Shown piece after piece: positions 19,881-58,538 of a DNA stretch of 64,000 nt. A program made the translations under genes and the position numbers. Location: IMG/VR virus record IMGVR_UViG_3300032236_001613, positions 124,001 to 188,000 of that record; one strand, 5' to 3'. Numbering within the stretch: position 1 is the first letter of the stretch; each line of letters starts with the position of its first letter. A model generated the notes under the pieces. That model ran no database searches and had not been told where the DNA came from. It saw only the letters and a program-made list of their open reading frames with translations.

Positions 19881-21076
19881 TGCCTTTAGTTTTAGCATCA
19901 ACTACTGCTACGACATCTACAGTAAAGCTAATACACGGTAGCATTACTGTAGATTTGTTGCAAGCTCTTAATATGCAGCATCTGTATGATAGCATTATAA
20001 CTGCCAATCCTCCTGATCCCGGATGTACAGTTGCCCAGATGCAAATTCCTTTTATTGGATTAAATTTTAAAGATATAGGAATCATTAATCCCATTAGCGA
20101 TATTAAGCAGGCAATATCACGATTGTATGCTGCATTGCTAAGAGAAGTTATGAAACCTATTTGGGATATATTAAGAGCTATTCTTAAAGTACTAGAGAAA
20201 TTTATTAGTTTTGTAATAGATTTAAAGTTGCCTGTTTTAGATTTACATATTGATGATTTATTTGCACATGATCTCTATGATAAAATTAAAGCTGCCATTA
20301 CAAAACTTTATTATAAAGAAAAACAAAAAGTAATTGATATTTTAAATAAACTTAAAATTCCCTATCCATTTTTTATCGACTTTACTAGTATTGAAAAAGA
20401 AATTGAACACATTGTTGAAAAAATAATGCATAGTCTTTGGGATTCGTTATTCAAACTCATCTTTAAAATTATCGATATAATCGGAGTAGCATTAGAAGCA
20501 TTTGATATAGCTACGCATGGTGTACCAACTTTATCGGTAATTTGGAAAAAAATTGTCGAGGCAGTTTTATTAAAAGTATTAGAATTTTTTGCTGCCCCGT
20601 TTAGTATAGAAGATATCGAAAAAGCTATTAAAAAATTTGTTAAGGCTGAACTTAAAAAAGCAGTTGATGCTGCAAAGGCTGCAGTCGAAAAAGCAGTAGG
20701 GGCTGCATTAGCAGAAGCTCAAAAAGTTCTTGATGAAGCCGAAGCATTATATGAAAGAGCTGAACATGCTTATTATGAAATTATGCAAATGATTCATAAG
20801 TTCAAGTTACCAGTGTTTGGTTCACCATTTGATTGGCATCTTCCTTTAAACATCAAAGTTAATATTCCAAATTTAGATTTTAGCAAACTTGTTAATGATA
20901 TTAAAATCTGGATAAATCACTTTCTTGCTAATTTACTATTAAAATTTATGCAACTAATTGACGAAATTTTAAAAGCATTAGGACTTAATTTTATTATACC
21001 TAAAATTACTATTCCATTTATTCTAATGGAAGTTTGCGAAGAACCAATTAATATAAAACAGTTGCAATTTGCTTAA
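19880..21076 (+). CDS. Hypothetical amphipathic-helical protein
   Basis: 398-aa ORF coupled by TAATG; Ile/Leu/Lys-rich. Confidence 0.55.
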   Translation: MPLVLASTTATTSTVKLIHGSITVDLLQALNMQHLYDSIITANPPDPGCTVAQMQIPFIGLNFKDIGIINPISDIKQAISRLYAALLREVMKPIWDILRAILKVLEKFISFVIDLKLPVLDLHIDDLFAHDLYDKIKAAITKLYYKEKQKVIDILNKLKIPYPFFIDFTSIEKEIEHIVEKIMHSLWDSLFKLIFKIIDIIGVALEAFDIATHGVPTLSVIWKKIVEAVLLKVLEFFAAPFSIEDIEKAIKKFVKAELKKAVDAAKAAVEKAVGAALAEAQKVLDEAEALYERAEHAYYEIMQMIHKFKLPVFGSPFDWHLPLNIKVNIPNLDFSKLVNDIKIWINHFLANLLLKFMQLIDEILKALGLNFIIPKITIPFILMEVCEEPINIKQLQFA

Positions 21077-21109
21077 ATACTGTTATAATATTCTATAAAG
21101 GAGAATAAA

Positions 21110-21253
21110 ATGTTTACAGTTATTGTACTTTTAGTTATTGCTGGAGTATTAGTATACGTTGGAACACGTAATAAGGGATCTTCTTCGTCAGGTTCATCAT
21201 CAGGCGGTGCTAGTATGCCTGGTGTTGATAATACTAAAGAAAATAAGAATTAA
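21110..21253 (+). CDS. Small membrane protein (47 aa, absent from the ORF track)
   Basis: AAGGAG SD; extended -10 TGTTATAAT at 21081-21089; MFTVIVLLVIAGVLVYVG followed by a Ser/Gly-rich tail. Confidence 0.65.
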   Translation: MFTVIVLLVIAGVLVYVGTRNKGSSSSGSSSGGASMPGVDNTKENKN

Positions 21254-21632
21254 TGGTAGTAAACTCTTAAGTAAAGACGGTCTGGACGGGGAGTGCGACC
21301 CTCCCCCACCTCCACCATAGGTACATTTGATGCGAAAAATATTTGTAGTTGGGTTTTTAATGTTGTTGGCGGTCTTTGGTATATATAAGATTTTAAAATA
21401 TTCAGCTGACCATCCAACACAATGTAATATGTGGCACAGATGTTAAGTGTATCTATGTCGGGGGTGCGTAGTTTCGACAGAGTGTGTAATAGTCAAAGGG
21501 CTACTGGTGAGATGACTGACCTAATCAGCATAAACAAAAATAAATGCTAATGACAGTGTTTATGATGTTGCTATCGCTGCTTAATTGCAGTCTAGTAAAC
21601 AGAGTTTGATCACTCGGTAACAGAACGGTCAG
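21254..21632 (+). ncRNA. ssrA: Circularly permuted (two-piece) tmRNA: acceptor piece ending CCA at 21317, coding piece starting at 21460
   Basis: GGGGGTG (21460-21466) pairs with CACCTCC before ACCA (ends 21317), with the G3:U alanine determinant; T-arm GGGGAG-TGCGACC-CTCCCC; tag frame 21546-21584 reads ANDSVYDVAIAA-stop; the outer ends of both pieces are approximate. Confidence 0.93.
21330..21446 (+). CDS. 38-aa putative membrane peptide inside the tmRNA intervening segment
   Basis: MRKIFVVGFLMLLAVFGIYKILKYSADHPTQCNMWHRC; AGGT upstream; one transmembrane helix. Confidence 0.55.
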   Translation: MRKIFVVGFLMLLAVFGIYKILKYSADHPTQCNMWHRC

Positions 21633-21661
21633 ATAAAGGAGCTTCGGCTCCTTTATTTTTT
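21633..21661 (+). terminator. Intrinsic terminator after the tmRNA coding piece
   Basis: ATAAAGGAGC-TTCG-GCTCCTTTAT followed by a T run. Confidence 0.88.
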
Positions 21662-21699
21662 GTAATACAAATGTAATGTTTTTATAGTTAAATATTACT

Positions 21700-22449
21700 A
21701 TGAAAAAAACATACCGAACAATATGTATTAGTGATGTGCATTTAGGCACTAAAGACTGCAAAGCTGAACAGCTTAATAATTTCCTTAAAAATAACAGTTG
21801 CGAAACACTGTATCTAATAGGTGATATTATTGACGCATGGAAAATTCAACAGAATCGTTGGAAATGGAAACAAAGCCATACTAACGTAATTCGTAGAATT
21901 TTAGGACATGCTAAACGCGATACCAGAGTAGTTTACATAGCCGGTAATCATGACGAATTCTTAAGACCATTATTGCAATATAATATTGCGTTTGGACATG
22001 TAGAAATCGTTAACCAAACAGAGCATCACGGTATTGATGGAAAACGTTACTTATTAACACATGGTGATTTGTTTGATGGTATTACAAGACTAGCACCATG
22101 GATTAGTTTCTTAGGCGATCGTGCGTATGACGTTGTATTGTCTTTAAACACCCGATTTAATTGGTTACGGCATCGTATGGGATTTGGTTACTGGAGCCTA
22201 AGCAAATATCTAAAACAACGTGTTAAAAAGGCTGTCGACTTTATGTTTCAATTTGAACATAATCTTGCTGCCTACTGCAAAAAACGTGGGTTCGATGGTG
22301 TAATCTGCGGTCATATACATCATGCAGAAATTAAAGAAATCGACGGTGTTGTATATATGAACGACGGCGACTGGGTGGAGTCTATGACTGCCTTGGTCGA
22401 GCATCATGACGGTCGTTGGGAAATCGTTACCTGGACTAAAGAAAAATAA
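21700..22449 (+). CDS. Calcineurin-like metallophosphoesterase, LpxH/UDP-2,3-diacylglucosamine hydrolase-like
   Basis: ISDVHLG, LIGDIID, AGNHDE, THGDLFD and ICGHIH motifs. Confidence 0.85.
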   Translation: MKKTYRTICISDVHLGTKDCKAEQLNNFLKNNSCETLYLIGDIIDAWKIQQNRWKWKQSHTNVIRRILGHAKRDTRVVYIAGNHDEFLRPLLQYNIAFGHVEIVNQTEHHGIDGKRYLLTHGDLFDGITRLAPWISFLGDRAYDVVLSLNTRFNWLRHRMGFGYWSLSKYLKQRVKKAVDFMFQFEHNLAAYCKKRGFDGVICGHIHHAEIKEIDGVVYMNDGDWVESMTALVEHHDGRWEIVTWTKEK

Positions 22450-22740: not shown

Positions 22741-23046
22741 ATGTCAGCAATTAACACGTTGTATTCTTTGGAACAGTTTTGCCTAGATTCTAGCAGCCTT
22801 GCAGAACGGTGGCAGGGTAATAGTGCGTTCTATCAGTGGAGTAAGGGCAAAACTACCGACGAAGGTATTATTAACGGTGTAGTACGCAAGCTAGCCGGAA
22901 CAGACACGGCAGGTAATGAAATTTGGGTAGTTGCTGGTTCTTTTAAGATTGCTGCTAACGGAGAAATTCTACGCTTTACCGGTATTAGTAAAAAGCAATG
23001 GGGTATTATTCAAGTACTTCCTGCTAAGGATCCAATTGCTGCATAA
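22741..23046 (+). CDS. Hypothetical phage protein
   Basis: AGGAG SD; 101 aa. Confidence 0.6.
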   Translation: MSAINTLYSLEQFCLDSSSLAERWQGNSAFYQWSKGKTTDEGIINGVVRKLAGTDTAGNEIWVVAGSFKIAANGEILRFTGISKKQWGIIQVLPAKDPIAA

Positions 23047-24347
23047 TGTTTGCTTTAGTATATCTAGCATTTATTGCAGCCGTAATTATTTTCTATCTTA
23101 AAAAGAAAAGAAAAACTCACAACAAATCGGTAGCAGTATTAGAAGAAGCAGTTGAATCAGGCTTAACAGAGCCTGTTTCAATGCATCCGGTAATTGATAC
23201 CGATCAGTGTATTGGCTGTGGTAGTTGCGTTAAAGCTTGTCCAGAAAGCCACCACCATGTTTTAGGGTTAATTAACGGAAAAGCAGCTCTTACTAGTCCT
23301 ACCGAATGTATCGGGCATGGTGCTTGTAAATTAGCTTGCCCGGTTGATGCAATTACTCTAGTATTTGGTACTGCACGACGTGGCGTGGATTTACCAGTAG
23401 TTAAGCCCACGTTTGAAACTAATGTTAATGGACTCTATGTTGCTGGTGAACTAGGCGGAATGGGACTAATTAAGAATGCACTAACACAAGGGAGGGAAGC
23501 TGTTGAAAATATTAGTAAGAATTGTATTCGTGGTCAAAGTCAGTATGATCTTATTATCGTTGGCGGCGGCCCTTCTGGTCTCGGCGCAGCTTTTACTGCA
23601 CTTAGCGAAAAACTTAATTATGTAGTGATTGAGCAAGATTCGTTAGGAGGTACTGTTTTTAAATATCCTCGTAGAAAATTGGTTATGACCCAACCAGTTA
23701 CTATGCCCGTACTAGGTAAGATACACTTTAGAAATACTACTAAAGAAGAACTATTAGGCTACTGGAGCGAAAAAAGCCAAGAGCACAATTTAAATCTTAG
23801 ATTTAATGAACGTGTTGAAAGTGTTGTTAAAGACGGCACAGGGTTTGTTGTTACTACTACATTAGGCATTTACCATGCTACTAATGTATTGTTATCCATC
23901 GGCAGGCGTGGTAGCCCGAGAACACTAGGAGTGCCTGGCGAGGAATTGTCAAAAGTAGTTTACAGGCTTATCGACCCTGAACAATATAAGGGCGCACATG
24001 TATTAGTAGTCGGCGGCGGCGATAGCGCACTAGAAGCTGCTGCTAGCGTTGCTGAAGCCGATCCTACTAATCGCGTTACACTGTCTTATCGTAGTGCAGT
24101 TTTTCAAAGAGCTAAACCTGCTAATAGACAGCGTGTAGATGCTGCTGTTAAAAAGGGCAACTTAGAAGTAATACTAAATTCTAACGTATACCAAATTGGT
24201 GAGGATTATGTTATTCTCCAAATTGGTAAAGAAGATTTGCGTATTTTAGAGAATAATGCTATTATTGTTAATGCAGGTGGTATCTTACCAGATGCATTTT
24301 TGAAAAAATGTGGTATTAAAGTTGTAACTAAGTGGGGTACAGAATGA
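23046..24347 (+). CDS. Membrane-anchored 2x[4Fe-4S] ferredoxin / FAD-NAD(P) thioredoxin-reductase-like oxidoreductase
   Basis: N-terminal transmembrane helix; CIGCGSCVKACP and CIGHGACKLACP; GGGPSG and GGGDSA dinucleotide-binding motifs. Confidence 0.85.
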   Translation: MFALVYLAFIAAVIIFYLKKKRKTHNKSVAVLEEAVESGLTEPVSMHPVIDTDQCIGCGSCVKACPESHHHVLGLINGKAALTSPTECIGHGACKLACPVDAITLVFGTARRGVDLPVVKPTFETNVNGLYVAGELGGMGLIKNALTQGREAVENISKNCIRGQSQYDLIIVGGGPSGLGAAFTALSEKLNYVVIEQDSLGGTVFKYPRRKLVMTQPVTMPVLGKIHFRNTTKEELLGYWSEKSQEHNLNLRFNERVESVVKDGTGFVVTTTLGIYHATNVLLSIGRRGSPRTLGVPGEELSKVVYRLIDPEQYKGAHVLVVGGGDSALEAAASVAEADPTNRVTLSYRSAVFQRAKPANRQRVDAAVKKGNLEVILNSNVYQIGEDYVILQIGKEDLRILENNAIIVNAGGILPDAFLKKCGIKVVTKWGTE

Positions 24348-36199: not shown

Positions 36200-36720
36200 C
36201 AACTAAGGCACACTCACTGGCATAAACATAGGCACATCAATCAACGCTTAAGCTCGCACCGGCTAATTTCGGGTGCCTATGATAACCGGACAACAAAGTC
36301 GCGGGGACAGAAATCCTGTGTGTTGACAGGAACTCAGCCACTACCCCTTCAGGGATGATGATGGAATATGCCTATATAATCCGTTTGGCTAAGATAAAAA
36401 TACTAAGGCTCTTTTGATCGCGGCTCTGTGAAAAAGATACAACCGCAAATACTACATATCTGCTAACATCGGTGTGTAGCGTTCCCGTTAGATTGAAGTT
36501 AGGAATAAGAAGTACAGGCTAACCGCTTCTGCGCAGCAATGCAATTTCCGAATGTTAGTGACCAACGAACTCAGGTAATAATCGTTAGAAAATCTTCGCC
36601 CTGTTTTGGGCGAAGTATGACATTAAAATCTAGGTAATCAATTCACTCTTAATAATTTTTCTCTTTCTTATAAAAGGTGATGAGCGCGAGCGAAATCACG
36701 GGCGAATCCTTTCGCCCCTT
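36200..36720 (+). ncRNA. Candidate large structured ncRNA (family unassigned)
   Basis: About 520 nt with no ORF, more GC-rich than its flanks, many hairpins (e.g. CATAGGCAC/GTGCCTATG, TCCTGT/ACAGGA, CTTCGCCC/GGGCGAAG). Confidence 0.5.
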
Positions 36721-45600: not shown

Positions 45601-47628
45601 ATGTTTAAAAAAATTCTGTTGAGTCCGTGGACTGCACTACTTACACTTTTTTTAGTAGTTGCTGTTAGAGTGGTCGATCCTAGCTTTGTTGAAAGTGTGC
45701 GCCTTAGATATTTTGATACTTTAATTACAAATAAAGCATCTACGGCTAATAATATTTTTACTGTTAATATTGACGAAGCTGCATTAGATCGTTACGGTCA
45801 ATGGCCATTACCTCGCAACGTATATGCTGACATTATACAAGATTTGTATAATCGTCATGCAGGATTAGTTGTATTAGATGTTGTAATGTCTGAAAAAGAT
45901 CGTATGGGCGGCGATTCTGCATTAGCTGATATGATGAAACAGTATCCAGTAGTATTAGCTAACATTCCAGCAGAAAAAACTAAAAACGATCCGCGTGCAC
46001 CCGGAAGTGCAGTAATGGGTGCAGATCATTTAGATCGTATTGTACAATATCCGGGACTAATTGCTAATATTCCTGCATTAGAAGAAAATGCTGTAGGTAT
46101 AGGCAGTGTAAACACTATGCCAGAAATTGATGGAGTTAATCGTCGTGTACCTTTAATTGCTGCAATTAACGGAAAACTATACCCGTCATTAGCCATGGAA
46201 GCACTACGTGTTGCAGGTAATGATACTACATTTCAAGTTAAGCTTAACGAAAATGGTGTAGAGAAAATGCGTATACCTGCATTCGGACCTATCGCAACAG
46301 ATAGCCTAGGACGCATTTGGGTTGACTGGAGTCAACAAAATCGACAGATTTCTATAACAGATTTACCTAAAGACTTTAATGGTGCTGTAGTTATAGTAGG
46401 CCCTACTGCTGCAGGTATTGCTAATCCTGTTCCGACTTCTCGAGGCGCGGTTTATCCTCAAGATATGCAAGCTGCAGTATTAGGTACAATGATAAATGGC
46501 GTAACAATACAAAGACCCGATTATGCAGACGGACTAGAAATCGTTGCTATTTTATTAGCAAGTGTTATACTGTTAATTCTAACAAGGTGGGTTTATGCAG
46601 GATTGGCGGCAGTCGTTATTTTACTGGGTTCAGGAGCTTTTGGCAGTTATTATCTTTTTAGCCATTACCTTTGGCTTTTTGATGCTAGTGCTTTTGTTGC
46701 TGCGATCGTCCTTGTGTCACTCCATGCCTATGGAGTTAAATTCGTTAGTGAATATTTGCAGAAGCAACAAATAAAGAAACAGTTTGGCACATACTTGAGT
46801 CCGGCAATGGTTGAAAAATTACAAAAAAATCCCGAACTATTAAAGTTGGGCGGTGAATCACGCGAACTTAGTATTATGTTTACGGACGTTCGAGGATTTA
46901 CAGGAATTAGCGAACACTATGGCAAGGATGTACAGGGACTTACTAAGATTATGAATCGCTATATGACTGCCATGACTGCAAAAATCATAGAGAATGAAGG
47001 TACACTAGATAAGTACATTGGTGATGCACAAATGGCATTCTGGAACGCACCGTTAGACGATGCTGCCCACGCTAAACATGCTGTAAAAACTGCATTAGCT
47101 ATGTTAAAAGATTTGGAGAATTTTAATGCAGAAATCGCTAAAGAAGGTGTTCCAGAGTTTGGAATGGGGCTTGGCATTAACACTGATACTGTCGTGGTTG
47201 GCAATATGGGGAGTAGTCAGCGTTTTGATTATACTTGTCTTGGGGACGGCGTTAATCTTGCGAGTCGTTTGGAAGGACAAAGTAAGCCCTATGGTGTCAA
47301 GATTATTCTCGGGCCGAAAACAGCAGAATATGTAATGGACGAATATCCTTTAATCGAATTAGATTTAATTGCTGTTAAAGGTAAAAAAGAACCTGTTAAG
47401 ATCTATACTGTAGCACCGATTGACGATGCTATGGCTTGGCTATTACACGAAAAGTTCTTAGATGCCTACAGAGACGGTATGTGGGTAGGTGCACGTTTCT
47501 ATGCTGAAGAATTGCGTGACAAAGGATGGAATGGCGAGATGTACAAGTATTACGAAATGATGCTAGAGCGTATGCAAGGAGAAGTTCCGTTAGATTGGGA
47601 CGGTGTATTTAGAGCCACTAGCAAATAA
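45601..47628 (+). CDS. CHASE2-domain class III adenylate/guanylate cyclase
   Basis: YGQWPLPR, DGVNRR (CHASE2); transmembrane helices; MFTDVRGFT, DKYIGDAQMAFW, GDGVNLASRLE. Confidence 0.93.
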   Translation: MFKKILLSPWTALLTLFLVVAVRVVDPSFVESVRLRYFDTLITNKASTANNIFTVNIDEAALDRYGQWPLPRNVYADIIQDLYNRHAGLVVLDVVMSEKDRMGGDSALADMMKQYPVVLANIPAEKTKNDPRAPGSAVMGADHLDRIVQYPGLIANIPALEENAVGIGSVNTMPEIDGVNRRVPLIAAINGKLYPSLAMEALRVAGNDTTFQVKLNENGVEKMRIPAFGPIATDSLGRIWVDWSQQNRQISITDLPKDFNGAVVIVGPTAAGIANPVPTSRGAVYPQDMQAAVLGTMINGVTIQRPDYADGLEIVAILLASVILLILTRWVYAGLAAVVILLGSGAFGSYYLFSHYLWLFDASAFVAAIVLVSLHAYGVKFVSEYLQKQQIKKQFGTYLSPAMVEKLQKNPELLKLGGESRELSIMFTDVRGFTGISEHYGKDVQGLTKIMNRYMTAMTAKIIENEGTLDKYIGDAQMAFWNAPLDDAAHAKHAVKTALAMLKDLENFNAEIAKEGVPEFGMGLGINTDTVVVGNMGSSQRFDYTCLGDGVNLASRLEGQSKPYGVKIILGPKTAEYVMDEYPLIELDLIAVKGKKEPVKIYTVAPIDDAMAWLLHEKFLDAYRDGMWVGARFYAEELRDKGWNGEMYKYYEMMLERMQGEVPLDWDGVFRATSK

Positions 47629-55964: not shown

Positions 55965-56763
55965 TTTCCTTTAAATAATTATCCAATCCGTCATCTATAC
56001 CGTTCAATAAAATTGGTAATGATTCTAACAAAGTTCCATCACCTGTGTAGTTATTCTCATATACTGATTTAATAACAAAATTAGGTTCTATGTTGTTTAT
56101 GTAACAAAACTTAGATAAAACTTCACTAATTTTAAATTTGTTTTTATAAACTGCATTGATATCTTTTAAATTACAGTCTATTTCAGTAACATAATTAACA
56201 ACAGTGCAAAGATCTTGTATACTAAAATAATCAAAATATCTATCGTTAATAACTTCAAATATTTTTTCACTGTTGTTTAAAAATCTAGGAATCAATCTTG
56301 TACTTAATTCGCCTGGCCCAAAACAGTTAAAAATTCTAATATTATAAAAATTTTTTTTATCGTAACATAATCTGCTTTTAATATTTTGACCCCACCCATA
56401 ACTATCAGTGGGCATCCTTTCAAATATCAGTTTTTCTTTTGCATAGTTAATGTCTTGATTTCTGTCAAATTCTGCTCCTGATGCAGTGTTTATAAATTTT
56501 CCAAATAAATTGGAATTATTATAAAAATTCATAAACATTCCAAGATTATTTCTAGCGTCATTTAACATTGATGAATCTGTCATAATAGCTGCACAATTTA
56601 CAATTACATCAAATCTATTATTTTTTAAAAATTCTTTAACAGACAACGGGTTTAATAAATCTAAGGTATTTCTAGTAACTGGAGTTACCTGATGTATTAA
56701 ACTTAAAGATTTAGTTAAATTTGAACCAACAAACCCTTTTGCTCCGATAACAGCTATTTTCAT
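55945..56763 (-). CDS. NAD-dependent epimerase/dehydratase
   Basis: GAKGFVG, SGAEF, YGWGQNIK, RIFNCFG. Confidence 0.8.
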   Translation of the reverse strand: MKIAVIGAKGFVGSNLTKSLSLIHQVTPVTRNTLDLLNPLSVKEFLKNNRFDVIVNCAAIMTDSSMLNDARNNLGMFMNFYNNSNLFGKFINTASGAEFDRNQDINYAKEKLIFERMPTDSYGWGQNIKSRLCYDKKNFYNIRIFNCFGPGELSTRLIPRFLNNSEKIFEVINDRYFDYFSIQDLCTVVNYVTEIDCNLKDINAVYKNKFKISEVLSKFCYINNIEPNFVIKSVYENNYTGDGTLLESLPILLNGIDDGLDNYLKENANDCI

Positions 56764-58538
56764 ATTTTAACTACCATTTCTTTTTCTAATTCTTCTTGTG
56801 TAAGGAACGGTGACATGTCATGTAACCCTCCTTGAACTCCATTAAGCTTCATTGCTTGAGCTGGCTGTACATCTAGAACATTTTGACTTACAATCTCAAT
56901 AATAACAGGTTCATTTTTTCGCATTAAATCAGGTATATAACGATCGAGAGACTCGTTGTTTTCGATCTTAACATAAGATATTTCAAATGCTTCTGATACT
57001 TTTCCGATATCAGCAAAATATACTCCTGTTGACTGGCTAACCCCCCATTGACGTCCATTGAACATTTTATTCTGCGTTTGTTTAATGCTCATATATCCAT
57101 CATTATTAATGACAAATATTTTTACAGGAATATTATGTTTACGAATTACCGCAAGTTCTTGTACATTGGTATAAAAACTTCCTTCTCCAATAATAAGCAT
57201 AATGTTTAAACTTGTATCAGCGTAATGTATCCCTACACTTGCTGGAATAGCATATCCCATATCGCCTTGCGCAGCTTGCGCCATATAACGTGTATTTTTC
57301 TTAAATTTACCGTTTGTTGAAAGAATATAACAAGGTTGCCCTGCATCGACAATAAAAGCATCTTTTTCCTGCATATTACGGTTTAAACTTTCAACAATCT
57401 CGTATAAATTAACGCCGCCGATGTCGCTACGGTGTATTGAGGCATTATATATTGGCCATTTTTCTTTCCAATGCAATGCTTTTTTAGCCCACGTACTTGC
57501 ACTATAATCGTATGAATTTAATTGTGCTACCTTCAAAAAATCTTTTACATTACAATTAATTTTTTGATCTACTTTAAAAATATCTTTCTGTAATTCACTT
57601 GAATCAATATCAACCATAATTTTTACACTATAAGGACTAAAACTTTTTGTATCATATCCGATATGTGTAACATTCATCGAACAGCCCAATATTAATAAAC
57701 AATCCGCATTTTGTATAGCAAAGTTAGCGGCTCGATTTCCCTTAATACCCATCATTCCAATATTTTGCGGATGCTCATACTCGATTAGATCTCTCGTTAA
57801 AAAATTAGTAACAAATGGTATCTGATATTGATCAATAAATTTTCTGAATTCATCTCGACAATTAGCAATTGTAATTCCGTTACCAGCAACAATAACCGGT
57901 CTTTCGGATTTAAAAAGAATGTTTAAAGATTTTAAAATTTCTTCTTTACAATTAGTTGTATTATTGTCTTGATCCACTATAAATTCTTTATAAGTATCTG
58001 GAATGATTGCTGATTGTAAATTCCCCGGAACATCAATCCAAACAGGCCCAGGACGCCCGTTAGTGGCAATCCAAATTGCTTTTTCAAGCTCGTATGGAAC
58101 ATCTTCAGCACTTTCGATCATTACAGCATATTTTGTCATTCCAGATACCGCGCCAACAGTATCGAAATCTTGAATTCCGTATTTTCTTAAATTAAGCCCT
58201 CGTTCGGCATTAATTCGTTTGGCCATATTGAATGTTTGAGTATTACCGCTAAGAAATAATACTGGTACACTTTCTTGATAAGCGTTTAGACAACTAGTCA
58301 TTACGTTTGTAACCCCGCAACCTGCGGTAACATTACATACGCCTAATTTTCTATCTGTACGAGCTGATCCCGTTGCAGCATGTCCTGCACCTTGTTCGTG
58401 ATGAAACGCTACGAATTCGATATCCGGATGGCTAATAAATCCGTCATTAAGCCCAGCAGTACTTCCACCGACTAGCCCATATACTTTAGTAACACCAAGT
58501 TTATTTAACTTAGTAGCAATGTAATCACATACTCTCAT
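56760..58538 (-). CDS. Thiamine-diphosphate-dependent enzyme (acetolactate synthase/YerE-like)
   Basis: HHEQGAGHAA, GRPGPVWIDVP, GDMGYAIP, GEGSF..NNDGY. Confidence 0.9.
   Translation of the reverse strand: MRVCDYIATKLNKLGVTKVYGLVGGSTAGLNDGFISHPDIEFVAFHHEQGAGHAATGSARTDRKLGVCNVTAGCGVTNVMTSCLNAYQESVPVLFLSGNTQTFNMAKRINAERGLNLRKYGIQDFDTVGAVSGMTKYAVMIESAEDVPYELEKAIWIATNGRPGPVWIDVPGNLQSAIIPDTYKEFIVDQDNNTTNCKEEILKSLNILFKSERPVIVAGNGITIANCRDEFRKFIDQYQIPFVTNFLTRDLIEYEHPQNIGMMGIKGNRAANFAIQNADCLLILGCSMNVTHIGYDTKSFSPYSVKIMVDIDSSELQKDIFKVDQKINCNVKDFLKVAQLNSYDYSASTWAKKALHWKEKWPIYNASIHRSDIGGVNLYEIVESLNRNMQEKDAFIVDAGQPCYILSTNGKFKKNTRYMAQAAQGDMGYAIPASVGIHYADTSLNIMLIIGEGSFYTNVQELAVIRKHNIPVKIFVINNDGYMSIKQTQNKMFNGRQWGVSQSTGVYFADIGKVSEAFEISYVKIENNESLDRYIPDLMRKNEPVIIEIVSQNVLDVQPAQAMKLNGVQGGLHDMSPFLTQEELEKEMVVKI

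What the first reader, a model, noticed from the sequence alone, without database searches (positions are those of the whole stretch)
21318..21459. A protein-coding gene nested in the tmRNA intervening segment, with its start and stop locked in one stem
Seen: the segment that must be excised is 142 nt long. It holds an intact ORF (21330-21446), MRKIFVVGFLMLLAVFGIYKILKYSADHPTQCNMWHRC, which has one transmembrane helix and a C-terminal H..C...H.C cluster. Its ends pair as a 15-bp stem with wobbles (21318-21332 with 21441-21455) that stacks on the CCA end and covers the AGGT SD-like site, the ATG and the TAA. Established: the intervening segments I know in permuted tmRNAs are short non-coding spacers removed by RNase P and 3' processing. 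Inference: this is a dual-function transcript in which tmRNA maturation releases or gates a mini-mRNA for a membrane, possibly metal- or heme-binding, peptide. It could also be a cassette inserted in a way that leaves tRNA-like folding intact. I know of no description of this arrangement.
Basis: partly seen in the sequence, partly recalled or inferred. Interest (0 to 1): 0.85.

Follow-up and report, generated by a model that had tools for sequence, protein, structure and literature searches.

The report
Small protein gene inside phage tmRNA spacer
A jumbo phage's two-piece tmRNA gene carries a probably genuine 38-codon membrane-peptide gene in the spacer that is cut out during tmRNA maturation, and other uncultured phages hold different small genes at the same spot, an arrangement I could not find described.

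Summary
Window 21255-21584 is a permuted (two-piece) tmRNA (Rfam RF04321, 120 bits). Its 142-nt intervening segment (21318-21459) holds an intact 38-codon ORF (21330-21446), and the segment's ends pair in a 13-14 bp stem.

New findings:
1. An independent metagenome contig (L336) has the same 142-nt segment, 87% identical. Its ORF is intact and the same length, the stop changes TAA to TGA, there are 6 synonymous and 7 non-synonymous changes, and one stem pair is compensated.
2. A free-standing 64-aa gene (P0002) shares the C-terminal DHPxxCNMWxRC motif.
3. Syntenic close relatives (L002, L004) have a 5-nt spacer, so the ORF segment is an insertion/deletion cassette.
4. The closing stem is generic to these spacers, coding or not.
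5. About ten unrelated ORF families occupy this spacer in other phage tmRNAs. All segments of 137 nt or more are coding, and two families have dN/dS of 0.09 and 0.23.

The metal/heme-cluster idea is not supported, because His36 varies. Translation, release and gating are untested. I rate this a new variant of a known kind, of moderate-to-high interest.

The parts
21062..21089 (+). Sigma-70-type promoter (TTGCAA, 16 nt, TG-TATAAT) that likely drives the whole unit
   Evidence: 10 of 12 matches with an extended -10 TG. It is the best site in the region. Consensus match only, not shown to function.
21110..21253 (+). Upstream 47-aa ORF (TM helix plus Ser/Gly-rich tail) with a strong AAAGGAG SD. 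Its stop lies 1 nt before the tmRNA acceptor piece, so it is co-transcribed.
   Evidence: Conserved in L002 and L004, mostly through third-position changes. Codon-usage log-odds +25 against -28 and -58 in the other frames.
21255..21317 (+). tmRNA acceptor piece: P2 strand, an unusual 19-nt T-arm, the 3' acceptor strand CACCTCC, and ACCA
   Evidence: Rfam RF04321 alignment. The acceptor stem GGGGGUG/CACCUCC includes G3-U70, read directly from the sequence.
21318..21459 (+). Intervening segment (142 nt), absent from mature two-piece tmRNA by analogy with characterised permuted tmRNAs
   Evidence: It is 87.3% identical to L336:1087-1228. L002 and L004 have 5 nt (ACTAT) here instead. No second copy exists in the window.
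21318..21331 (+). 5' strand of the closing stem. It contains the SD-like AGGT (21319-21322) and the first two bases of the ATG.
   Evidence: 13-14 bp. C21324 to T in L336 is compensated by G to A on the other strand.
21330..21446 (+). 38-codon ORF for a small single-pass membrane peptide with a conserved C-terminal ...DHPxxCNMWxRC motif
   Evidence: intact in L336 (6 synonymous, 7 non-synonymous, stop TAA to TGA). Probable homologue P0002 (HMMER E 6.5e-4 library-wide; BLASTP 16/30 identities, ungapped to both C-termini).
21442..21455 (+). 3' strand of the closing stem. It contains the last codon and the TAA stop.
   Evidence: The middle base of the stop changes A to G in L336, which keeps both a stop codon and the pair (U-A to U-G).
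21460..21630 (+). tmRNA coding piece: the 5' acceptor strand GGGGGTG, the D-like TTTCGAC, P2/pseudoknot region, and the tag reading frame 21546-21584 (ANDSVYDVAIAA, stop)
   Evidence: ARAGORN reports the same tag on the syntenic L002.
21631..21665 (+). Intrinsic terminator: a 12-bp hairpin plus a T-run
   Evidence: the only terminator-like site in 20800-21800 (0.3 expected from shuffles).

Best explanation
The window is part of a 328-kb jumbo phage contig. One transcription unit (promoter 21062, terminator 21631) carries a 47-aa ORF and then a permuted tmRNA gene.

The 142-nt spacer between the CCA end of the acceptor piece and the 5' end of the coding piece has been colonised by a small gene. 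That gene encodes a 38-aa membrane peptide: a short basic N-terminus, one TM helix, and a short C-terminal tail with two conserved Cys and a Trp.

The spacer's ends pair in a stem, as in almost all spacers of this tmRNA class. I infer that this stem helps the precursor fold so that the two acceptor strands meet for RNase P and 3'-end processing. Because the ORF fills the spacer, its weak SD (AGGU), its AUG and its stop necessarily lie in that stem.

The peptide would be made either from the unprocessed precursor or from the excised 142-nt fragment. Translation and tmRNA maturation are then likely to compete, because a ribosome must open the stem that extends the acceptor helix.

Shown: the tmRNA, the spacer boundaries, the ORF and its conservation in one homologous tmRNA, the insertion/deletion relative to close kin, the generic stem, and the recurrence of other conserved ORFs at this site. 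Inferred: excision (by analogy with Caulobacter-type two-piece tmRNA), translation, membrane topology, and any gating.
For: - tmRNA identity and boundaries: (120 bits); tag and acceptor stem.
- Single transcription unit.
- ORF present, with shuffle P = 0.029.
- Homologous segment in L336: permuted tmRNA at 99.5 bits. The spacer is 87.3% identical while the rest of the tmRNA is 40-75% identical. The ORF is intact with 6 synonymous and 7 non-synonymous changes. Simulation gives P = 0.024 for keeping the ORF intact with at least 6 synonymous changes.
- Closing stem conserved, with one compensatory pair and a stop-codon change that keeps pairing.
- Protein-level homologue in unrelated, GC-richer DNA and not in a tmRNA.
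- Cassette nature: L002 and L004 have 5-nt spacers in the same locus with near-identical flanks. The nearest T-arm relatives have 10-37 nt spacers.
- Class-level evidence: every distinct spacer of 137 nt or more has a sense ORF covering at least 75% of it.
- Codon tests on other families: L181/L183 dN/dS 0.09; L210/L258 0.23; L310/L320 differences by codon position 4/1/8.
- SD motif enriched in coding spacers: Fisher P = 0.003.
- Generic closing stem: -10.6 kcal/mol for a spacer's own ends against -4.2 for mismatched ends.
Against: - Only one other copy of this particular spacer exists, so dN/dS (about 0.3) is not significant on its own (P about 0.05 for the synonymous excess).
- Codon usage of the ORF is atypical for this phage's genes: log-odds 0.3 against 14.6 +/- 4.7 for real 38-codon windows.
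- The SD is weak (AGGU) and is sequestered in a stem of about -15 kcal/mol.
- The P0002 match is borderline when BLAST statistics are extrapolated to the whole library (my estimate).
- No homologue was found by word-indexed protein search, in viral contigs, or in 241 million metagenome records.
- There are no expression data of any kind.
Confidence: 0.62

Rival explanations
1. The spacer is a non-coding structured RNA, a long processing hairpin, and the ORF is fortuitous. Its conservation in L336 would reflect recent shared ancestry or selection on RNA structure, not on a protein.
For: - The closing stem is generic and the spacer folds better than shuffles.
- The T-arm block next to the spacer is equally conserved (88%), which fits a recently exchanged block rather than selection on the ORF.
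- Codon usage is atypical and the SD is weak.
- A 39-codon ORF arises in about 3% of shuffles, which is not vanishingly rare.
Against: - 14 substitutions left the start, frame and stop intact. The stop changed to another stop and 6 of 13 codon changes are synonymous (joint P = 0.024).
- Apart from the closing stem, the predicted interior structure is not shared between the single-sequence fold and the consensus fold.
- P0002 conserves the peptide's C-terminal motif through synonymous differences in DNA of different composition, with no tmRNA nearby.
- Non-coding spacers of this class are shorter and more GC-rich, and all long AT-rich ones are coding.
Confidence: 0.22
2. The ORF is a type I toxin-like (Hok-like) or holin-like membrane peptide. 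Its mRNA is kept silent by 5'-3' fold-back pairing and is activated by processing of the excised spacer, giving the phage a timed membrane-active product.
For: - The peptide is 38 aa with one TM helix, a basic N-terminus and a Cys-containing tail.
- SD and AUG are occluded by pairing with the 3' end, which resembles hok-mRNA fold-back inhibition (resemblance recalled from established knowledge, not tested here).
- Six of about ten spacer ORF families are hydrophobic TM peptides.
Against: - The fold-back stem is also present in non-coding spacers, so it did not evolve to gate the ORF.
- No antisense promoter or antitoxin RNA is evident on the minus strand within the spacer.
- There are no Pfam or PHROG hits for any spacer peptide; PADLOC was not searched.
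- Other spacer ORFs are soluble, charged proteins.
Confidence: 0.12
3. The 142-nt segment is a mobile element (a MITE or IS remnant) or a self-splicing intron that landed in the tmRNA gene.
For: It is an insertion/deletion relative to close relatives, and its ends are imperfectly inverted.
Against: - No other copy exists in the 64-kb window or in more than 400 fetched loci apart from the homologous L336 tmRNA.
- The terminal pairing depends on G-U wobbles, so it works in RNA and not in DNA.
- No Rfam intron family matches.
- At 142 nt it is too small for a group I or II intron, and it lies between the CCA and the 5' end rather than in the T-loop where tmRNA introns sit (PMC11915505).
Confidence: 0.03

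Closest known systems
Permuted (two-piece) tmRNA genes of Alpha-/Betaproteobacteria, cyanobacteria and aquatic phages (Rfam RF04321, RF01850; Keiler 2000 and Sharkady & Williams 2004 as cited in PMC9004378; PMC11915505)
   Same: The gene order is the same: acceptor piece with T-arm and CCA, then an intervening sequence, then the coding piece with the tag frame. It has G3-U70 and an AND...AA tag. Two-piece tmRNAs were already known to be frequent in aquatic phages (53 reported in PMC9004378).
   Different: The intervening sequence here is 142 nt and carries a conserved ORF. The 2025 tmRNA database paper reports only a tRNA-Ala gene and a repetitive element as unusual contents of the intervening sequence, and mentions no ORFs.
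Group I introns in the tmRNA T-loop that carry LAGLIDADG homing-endonuclease genes (PMC11915505: 36 of 883 intron-form genes)
   Same: Both place a protein-coding gene inside a tmRNA gene, in a segment that is removed from the mature RNA.
   Different: Here there is no intron and no self-splicing. The segment is removed by ordinary tRNA-type end processing. The ORFs are tiny (22-69 aa), diverse, and not endonucleases. The location is between the CCA and the 5' end, not in the T-loop.
mRNA-tRNA co-transcripts and phage 'moron' genes (for example small ORFs within phage T4 tRNA clusters; the E. coli tufB operon led by tRNAs). Recalled from general knowledge.
   Same: Small protein genes ride on a strongly transcribed stable-RNA unit and are separated from it by RNase P or other processing. 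The window's upstream 47-aa ORF is exactly this arrangement.
   Different: Here the gene lies inside the permuted RNA gene. Its two ends must pair for the RNA to mature, so coding sequence and processing helix overlap.
hok/sok-type type I toxin mRNAs with 5'-3' fold-back inhibition. Recalled from general knowledge.
   Same: Both involve a short single-TM peptide whose SD and start are occluded by pairing with the 3' end of the same RNA.
   Different: No antisense RNA was found, no toxicity is known, and the pairing is a generic property of the spacer rather than of the ORF.

Membership tests
Permuted (two-piece) tmRNA gene | Covariance-model match with the acceptor piece (T-arm, CCA) upstream of the coding piece | tested here: met
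   RF04321 at 120.2 bits (gathering 47) and RF01850 at 89 bits (gathering 84).
Permuted (two-piece) tmRNA gene | Acceptor stem with G3-U70 (alanine identity) formed between the two pieces | tested here: met
   GGGGGUG (21460-21466) pairs with CACCUCC (21307-21313), with G3-U. L336 keeps it, with a compensated fifth pair (GGGGAUG/CAUCUCC).
Permuted (two-piece) tmRNA gene | Tag reading frame ending in hydrophobic residues plus a stop | tested here: met
   21546-21584 encodes ANDSVYDVAIAA then a stop. ARAGORN reports the identical tag in the syntenic L002.
Permuted (two-piece) tmRNA gene | Precursor cleaved into two pieces with loss of the intervening sequence | not testable with these tools
   Inferred from characterised two-piece tmRNAs. 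It needs northern blots or end-mapping.
Genuine protein-coding small gene | Intact ORF retained in homologous loci | tested here: met
   L336:1099-1215 has the same 38 codons with the stop kept as TGA. There is only one comparator.
Genuine protein-coding small gene | Purifying selection at codon level | tested here: inconclusive
   6 synonymous against 7 non-synonymous changes. P = 0.05 for the synonymous excess and 0.024 jointly with ORF integrity.
Genuine protein-coding small gene | Protein homologue in an independent genomic context | tested here: met
   P0002 (L337:3001-3195, no tmRNA in the locus): HMMER E 6.5e-4 over 1.84 billion proteins; BLASTP 16/30 identities running to both C-termini. 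By BLAST statistics the library-wide significance is borderline.
Genuine protein-coding small gene | Ribosome-binding site and host-like codon usage | tested here: inconclusive
   AGGU lies 7 nt before the AUG but is buried in the stem. Codon log-odds is 0.3 against 14.6 +/- 4.7 for real genes, although frame 0 is by far the best frame.
Genuine protein-coding small gene | Evidence of translation | not testable with these tools
   No expression data are available.
Type I toxin (Hok-like) | Small hydrophobic single-TM peptide | tested here: met
   38 aa with hydropathy maximum 2.36 over residues 4-22.
Type I toxin (Hok-like) | Cognate antisense RNA antitoxin | tested here: not met
   No minus-strand promoter-like site lies in or next to the spacer, and no Rfam antitoxin family matches.
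Group I intron with nested gene in tmRNA | Intron in the T-loop with a group I core | tested here: not met
   The segment lies between the CCA and the 5' end. No intron family is found in the window.
   His36 is Arg in L336 and Asn in P0002. His28, Cys32 and Cys38 are conserved.

The most novel reading that the evidence does not exclude
The spacer of phage two-piece tmRNA genes is a dedicated expression slot whose small ORFs are mechanistically coupled to tmRNA maturation and trans-translation. In half of the coding spacers the stop codon is the TGA that ends 1 nt before the RNase P cut. In two families (L310 type, L033/L271) there is no in-frame stop before the cut, so the excised fragment would be a stop-proximal or non-stop mRNA. 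Its peptide would then be a built-in substrate, sensor or regulator of the tmRNA released from the same precursor. The 52-aa L181 family, always found in or directly upstream of permuted tmRNA genes, would be a tmRNA-associated factor. The window's peptide would be one member of this system.
Probability: 0.12. Interest if true: 0.85.

Novelty: new variant of a known kind. Interest (0 to 1): 0.64.

Why it matters
Permuted tmRNA genes are treated as purely RNA genes whose intervening sequence is discarded. These data show that in uncultured aquatic phages the discarded segment repeatedly encodes small proteins, at least two families of which are under clear purifying selection. The coding sequence overlaps the helix needed to mature the RNA.

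This matters in three ways:
- It exposes a class of small phage genes that annotators mislabel or miscall. One homologue here had been called with TGA read as Trp, and another call started inside the tmRNA acceptor piece.
- It gives a natural system for studying competition between translation and RNase P or 3'-end processing on one transcript.
- It raises a testable link between phage small proteins and ribosome rescue.

For this window specifically, it identifies a rare three-member family of small membrane peptides with a conserved Cys/Trp tail.

Tried and rejected
- ARAGORN on the window finds no tmRNA. It also misses L336 and L193 but finds most other long-spacer tmRNAs, so spacer length is not the cause. 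The window and L336 share the unusual 19-nt T-arm.
- blastn of the locus against INPHARED phages gives no relative; only a chance terminator match appears.
- The peptide could not be sent to the search for related loci or the search for homologous proteins at 38 aa. A 41-aa in-frame stretch found nothing. The alignment route in metagenome contigs found nothing. A 3-sequence profile found only known members.
- My junction pattern was mistyped by one base and could not match even the window, so one viral scan was wasted.
- The T-arm pattern in metagenomes recovered T-arm relatives, but with 10-37 nt non-coding spacers, so no donor of the ORF was found that way. L336 escaped that pattern because its T-stem and acceptor differ by a few bases.
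- The genome-contig scan for CCA followed by AAGGA gave 64 hits, none a permuted tmRNA.
- Pfam and PHROGs on all spacer peptides, and the ESM Atlas search on P0002, gave nothing informative.
- MITE/repeat idea: no second copy.
- Internal duplication of P0002: none.
- The codon-usage test is equivocal.
- Keiler 2000 and Sharkady & Williams 2004 are not in the held library. Statements about processing of two-piece tmRNA therefore rest on general knowledge and on citations in PMC9004378 and PMC11915505.
- The AcrIIIA1-tmRNA paper and the huge-phage paper were read and are not relevant to spacer ORFs.

Full report
**1. What is at the coordinates**

The window is part of IMG/VR contig IMGVR_UViG_3300032236_001613 (328 kb); L001 and L082 are the window's own locus. 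Its genes are phage-like: a virion protein, a tail fibre or spike, RNR subunits and many auxiliary genes, almost all on one strand.

Rfam places a permuted tmRNA at 21255-21584 (RF04321, 120 bits; also RF01850, 89 bits). The acceptor piece ends in CACCTCCACCA at 21317 and the coding piece begins with GGGGGTG at 21460. The acceptor stem has G3-U70, and the tag frame 21546-21584 reads ANDSVYDVAIAA.

The segment's ends pair, 21318-21331 with 21442-21455, covering AGGT, the AUG and the UAA.

A near-consensus promoter (21062-21089) and a terminator (21631-21658) bracket a single unit. That unit also contains an upstream 47-aa ORF ending 1 nt before the tmRNA.

**2. Is the ORF more than chance?**

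Taken alone, the evidence is only modest. An ORF this long occurs in 2.9% of dinucleotide shuffles. Codon usage is atypical for the phage, although frame 0 is clearly the best frame.

The decisive material came from an exhaustive HMMER search of 1.84 billion representative proteins, which gave two hits.

P0001 maps to a 1.4-kb lake-metagenome contig, L336, which carries a permuted tmRNA (99.5 bits) with a 142-nt spacer. Read with code 11, the ORF there is intact and has the same 38 codons; the database protein had been called with TGA read as Trp.

Against the window there are 14 substitutions in the ORF, counting the stop codon. Six are synonymous, seven are non-synonymous, and the stop changes TAA to TGA. 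There are no indels. Random placement of the same substitutions keeps the ORF intact with at least six synonymous changes in 2.4% of trials.

The spacer is 87% identical between the two tmRNAs. The P2, pseudoknot, tag and tail regions are only 40-75% identical.

P0002 is a free-standing 64-aa, two-TM gene in an unrelated and more GC-rich contig with no tmRNA nearby. It aligns without gaps to residues 9-38 of the window's peptide, up to both C-termini, and shares S-x-D-H-P-x-x-C-N-M-W-x-R-C. The conserved residues are encoded with synonymous differences (one search compared). The library-wide significance is good by HMMER (6.5e-4) and borderline by BLAST statistics, so I treat P0002 as a probable homologue.

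No other members were found.

His36 of the proposed H..C...H.C cluster is not conserved.

**3. The segment is a cassette**

Two close relatives of this phage are L002 and L004; their downstream phosphoesterase is 99% and 96% identical to the window's. L002 carries the upstream 47-aa ORF and the tmRNA at the syntenic position, and in L004 both lie about 0.9 kb further upstream of the phosphoesterase; in both the spacer is just ACTAT. L002 has the identical tag.

Between the window and L002 the flanks are nearly identical. The block from the T-arm to P2 is diverged with compensatory changes, which suggests recombination with another tmRNA.

Metagenomic tmRNAs with the most similar T-arm have 10-37 nt non-coding spacers. 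The segment has no second copy in the window.

**4. The closing stem is generic**

I collected 82 distinct spacers from permuted tmRNAs on viral contigs. Lengths run from 4 to 235 nt, with a median of 63.5 nt in the unbiased scan.

Almost all begin (A/T)AAG... and end ...CTT(T/C/A)TGAT, with covarying bases in between. A spacer's own 5' and 3' ends pair at -10.6 kcal/mol on average, against -4.2 for ends taken from different spacers.

The stem that 'locks' start and stop is therefore a property of the spacer class. I presume it serves precursor folding. It is not an adaptation of this ORF.

**5. The arrangement recurs**

Every distinct spacer of 137 nt or more, and a few of 82-98 nt, carries a sense-strand ORF covering at least 75% of it. 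Shorter, more GC-rich spacers do not. About ten unrelated ORF families are seen. Six of them are hydrophobic TM peptides and the others are charged, soluble-looking proteins.

Codon-level tests support coding:
- L181/L183: dN/dS 0.09, differences by codon position 16/3/23, and indels only in multiples of three.
- L210/L258: dN/dS 0.23.
- L310/L320: the acceptor piece is identical, with 13 differences in the spacer distributed 4/1/8 by codon position.

In the unbiased scan, an SD-like motif directly after the CCA is found in 3 of 4 coding spacers and 2 of 39 non-coding ones (P = 0.003). Six of twelve ORFs stop in the TGA that ends 1 nt before the RNase P site. Two families have no stop before it.

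Coding spacers are also strongly structured, with interior z-scores down to -5.

The L181 family has at least 123 clusters at 90% identity. It lies either inside the spacer (L405, L406) or immediately upstream of a permuted tmRNA (L403, L407, L408).

No such spacer was found in representative cellular genomes with the pattern I used. None of the peptides matches a Pfam or PHROG family.

**6. Mechanism**

The best-supported reading is that a small membrane-peptide gene has lodged in the tmRNA spacer and is expressed from the tmRNA transcription unit. Its SD, start and stop lie in the helix that the precursor needs for maturation, so translation and processing probably compete.

Three things remain inferred: excision (by analogy with characterised two-piece tmRNAs), translation, and function.

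The rivals are a fortuitous ORF in a structural spacer, a Hok-like gated toxin, and a mobile element. They are weighed in the Rival explanations section.

**7. Novelty**

The searchable literature does not describe ORFs in the intervening sequence. That literature includes the 2025 tmRNA database paper, which lists a tRNA gene and a repeat in intervening sequences and homing-endonuclease genes in tmRNA introns. It also includes the phage Melnitz paper on phage two-piece tmRNAs.

I rate this a new variant of a known kind. The window's instance rests on one homologous copy plus one probable protein homologue. The class-level phenomenon is well supported.

Noticed in passing
window 21110-21253: A 47-aa ORF (TM helix plus Ser/Gly-rich tail, strong SD) sits between the promoter and the tmRNA, and its stop is 1 nt before the acceptor piece. 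It is conserved in L002 and L004 and has strongly gene-like codon usage. The tmRNA precursor is therefore also an mRNA at its 5' end.
   Followed up: partly
L181:6822-6977, L183:4640-4795, L405:701-856, L403:701-865, L407:461-625: A 50-54 aa acidic helical protein family (at least 123 clusters at 90% identity) was found in every sampled case either inside the spacer of a permuted tmRNA or immediately upstream of one. This suggests a functional link to the phage tmRNA.
   Followed up: partly
L310:2433-2569; L033 and L271 spacers: These spacer ORFs have no in-frame stop before the predicted RNase P cut and read on into the tmRNA coding piece. Once excised they would be non-stop mRNAs, the natural substrates of tmRNA.
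   Followed up: no
window 36251-36391: A full-length Polynucleobacter-1 RNA motif (RF01718, 91 bits against a gathering score of 37) lies on this phage contig. It hints at a freshwater betaproteobacterial host and at a phage-borne copy of this orphan RNA.
   Followed up: no
window 21275-21520 compared with L002:3715-3830: Mosaicism: the flanks are nearly identical between the window and L002, but the T-arm-to-P2 block of the tmRNA is strongly diverged with compensatory changes. L003, L005 and L006 (93-95% identical neighbouring gene) have no tmRNA within 4 kb. The tmRNA locus appears to be a recombination hot spot.
   Followed up: partly
L081:7403-7492 (minus strand): A 90-nt mini tmRNA-like tRNA-like domain (GGGGGTG ... 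19-nt T-arm ... CCACCA; RF00023, 48 bits) has no tag region and is embedded between or inside ORFs of a 72-kb viral contig.
   Followed up: no
L336:1129-1354 (P0001); L406:701-853 (P0117): Public gene calls at these loci are artefacts. P0001 reads TGA as Trp and runs into the tmRNA coding piece. P0117 starts inside the tmRNA acceptor piece. Small genes in tmRNA spacers are being miscalled.
   Followed up: yes
window 45601-47628; 56760-58538; 23046-24347: The contig carries unusual auxiliary genes for a phage: a CHASE2-sensor adenylate/guanylate cyclase, a TPP-dependent enzyme, and a ferredoxin-fused pyridine-nucleotide disulphide oxidoreductase.
   Followed up: no
window 21255-21584; L336:1024-1354: ARAGORN fails on the two tmRNAs that share a 19-nt T-arm (6-bp stem). 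It detects most other long-spacer permuted tmRNAs, so surveys that rely on ARAGORN alone will miss this subtype.
   Followed up: partly
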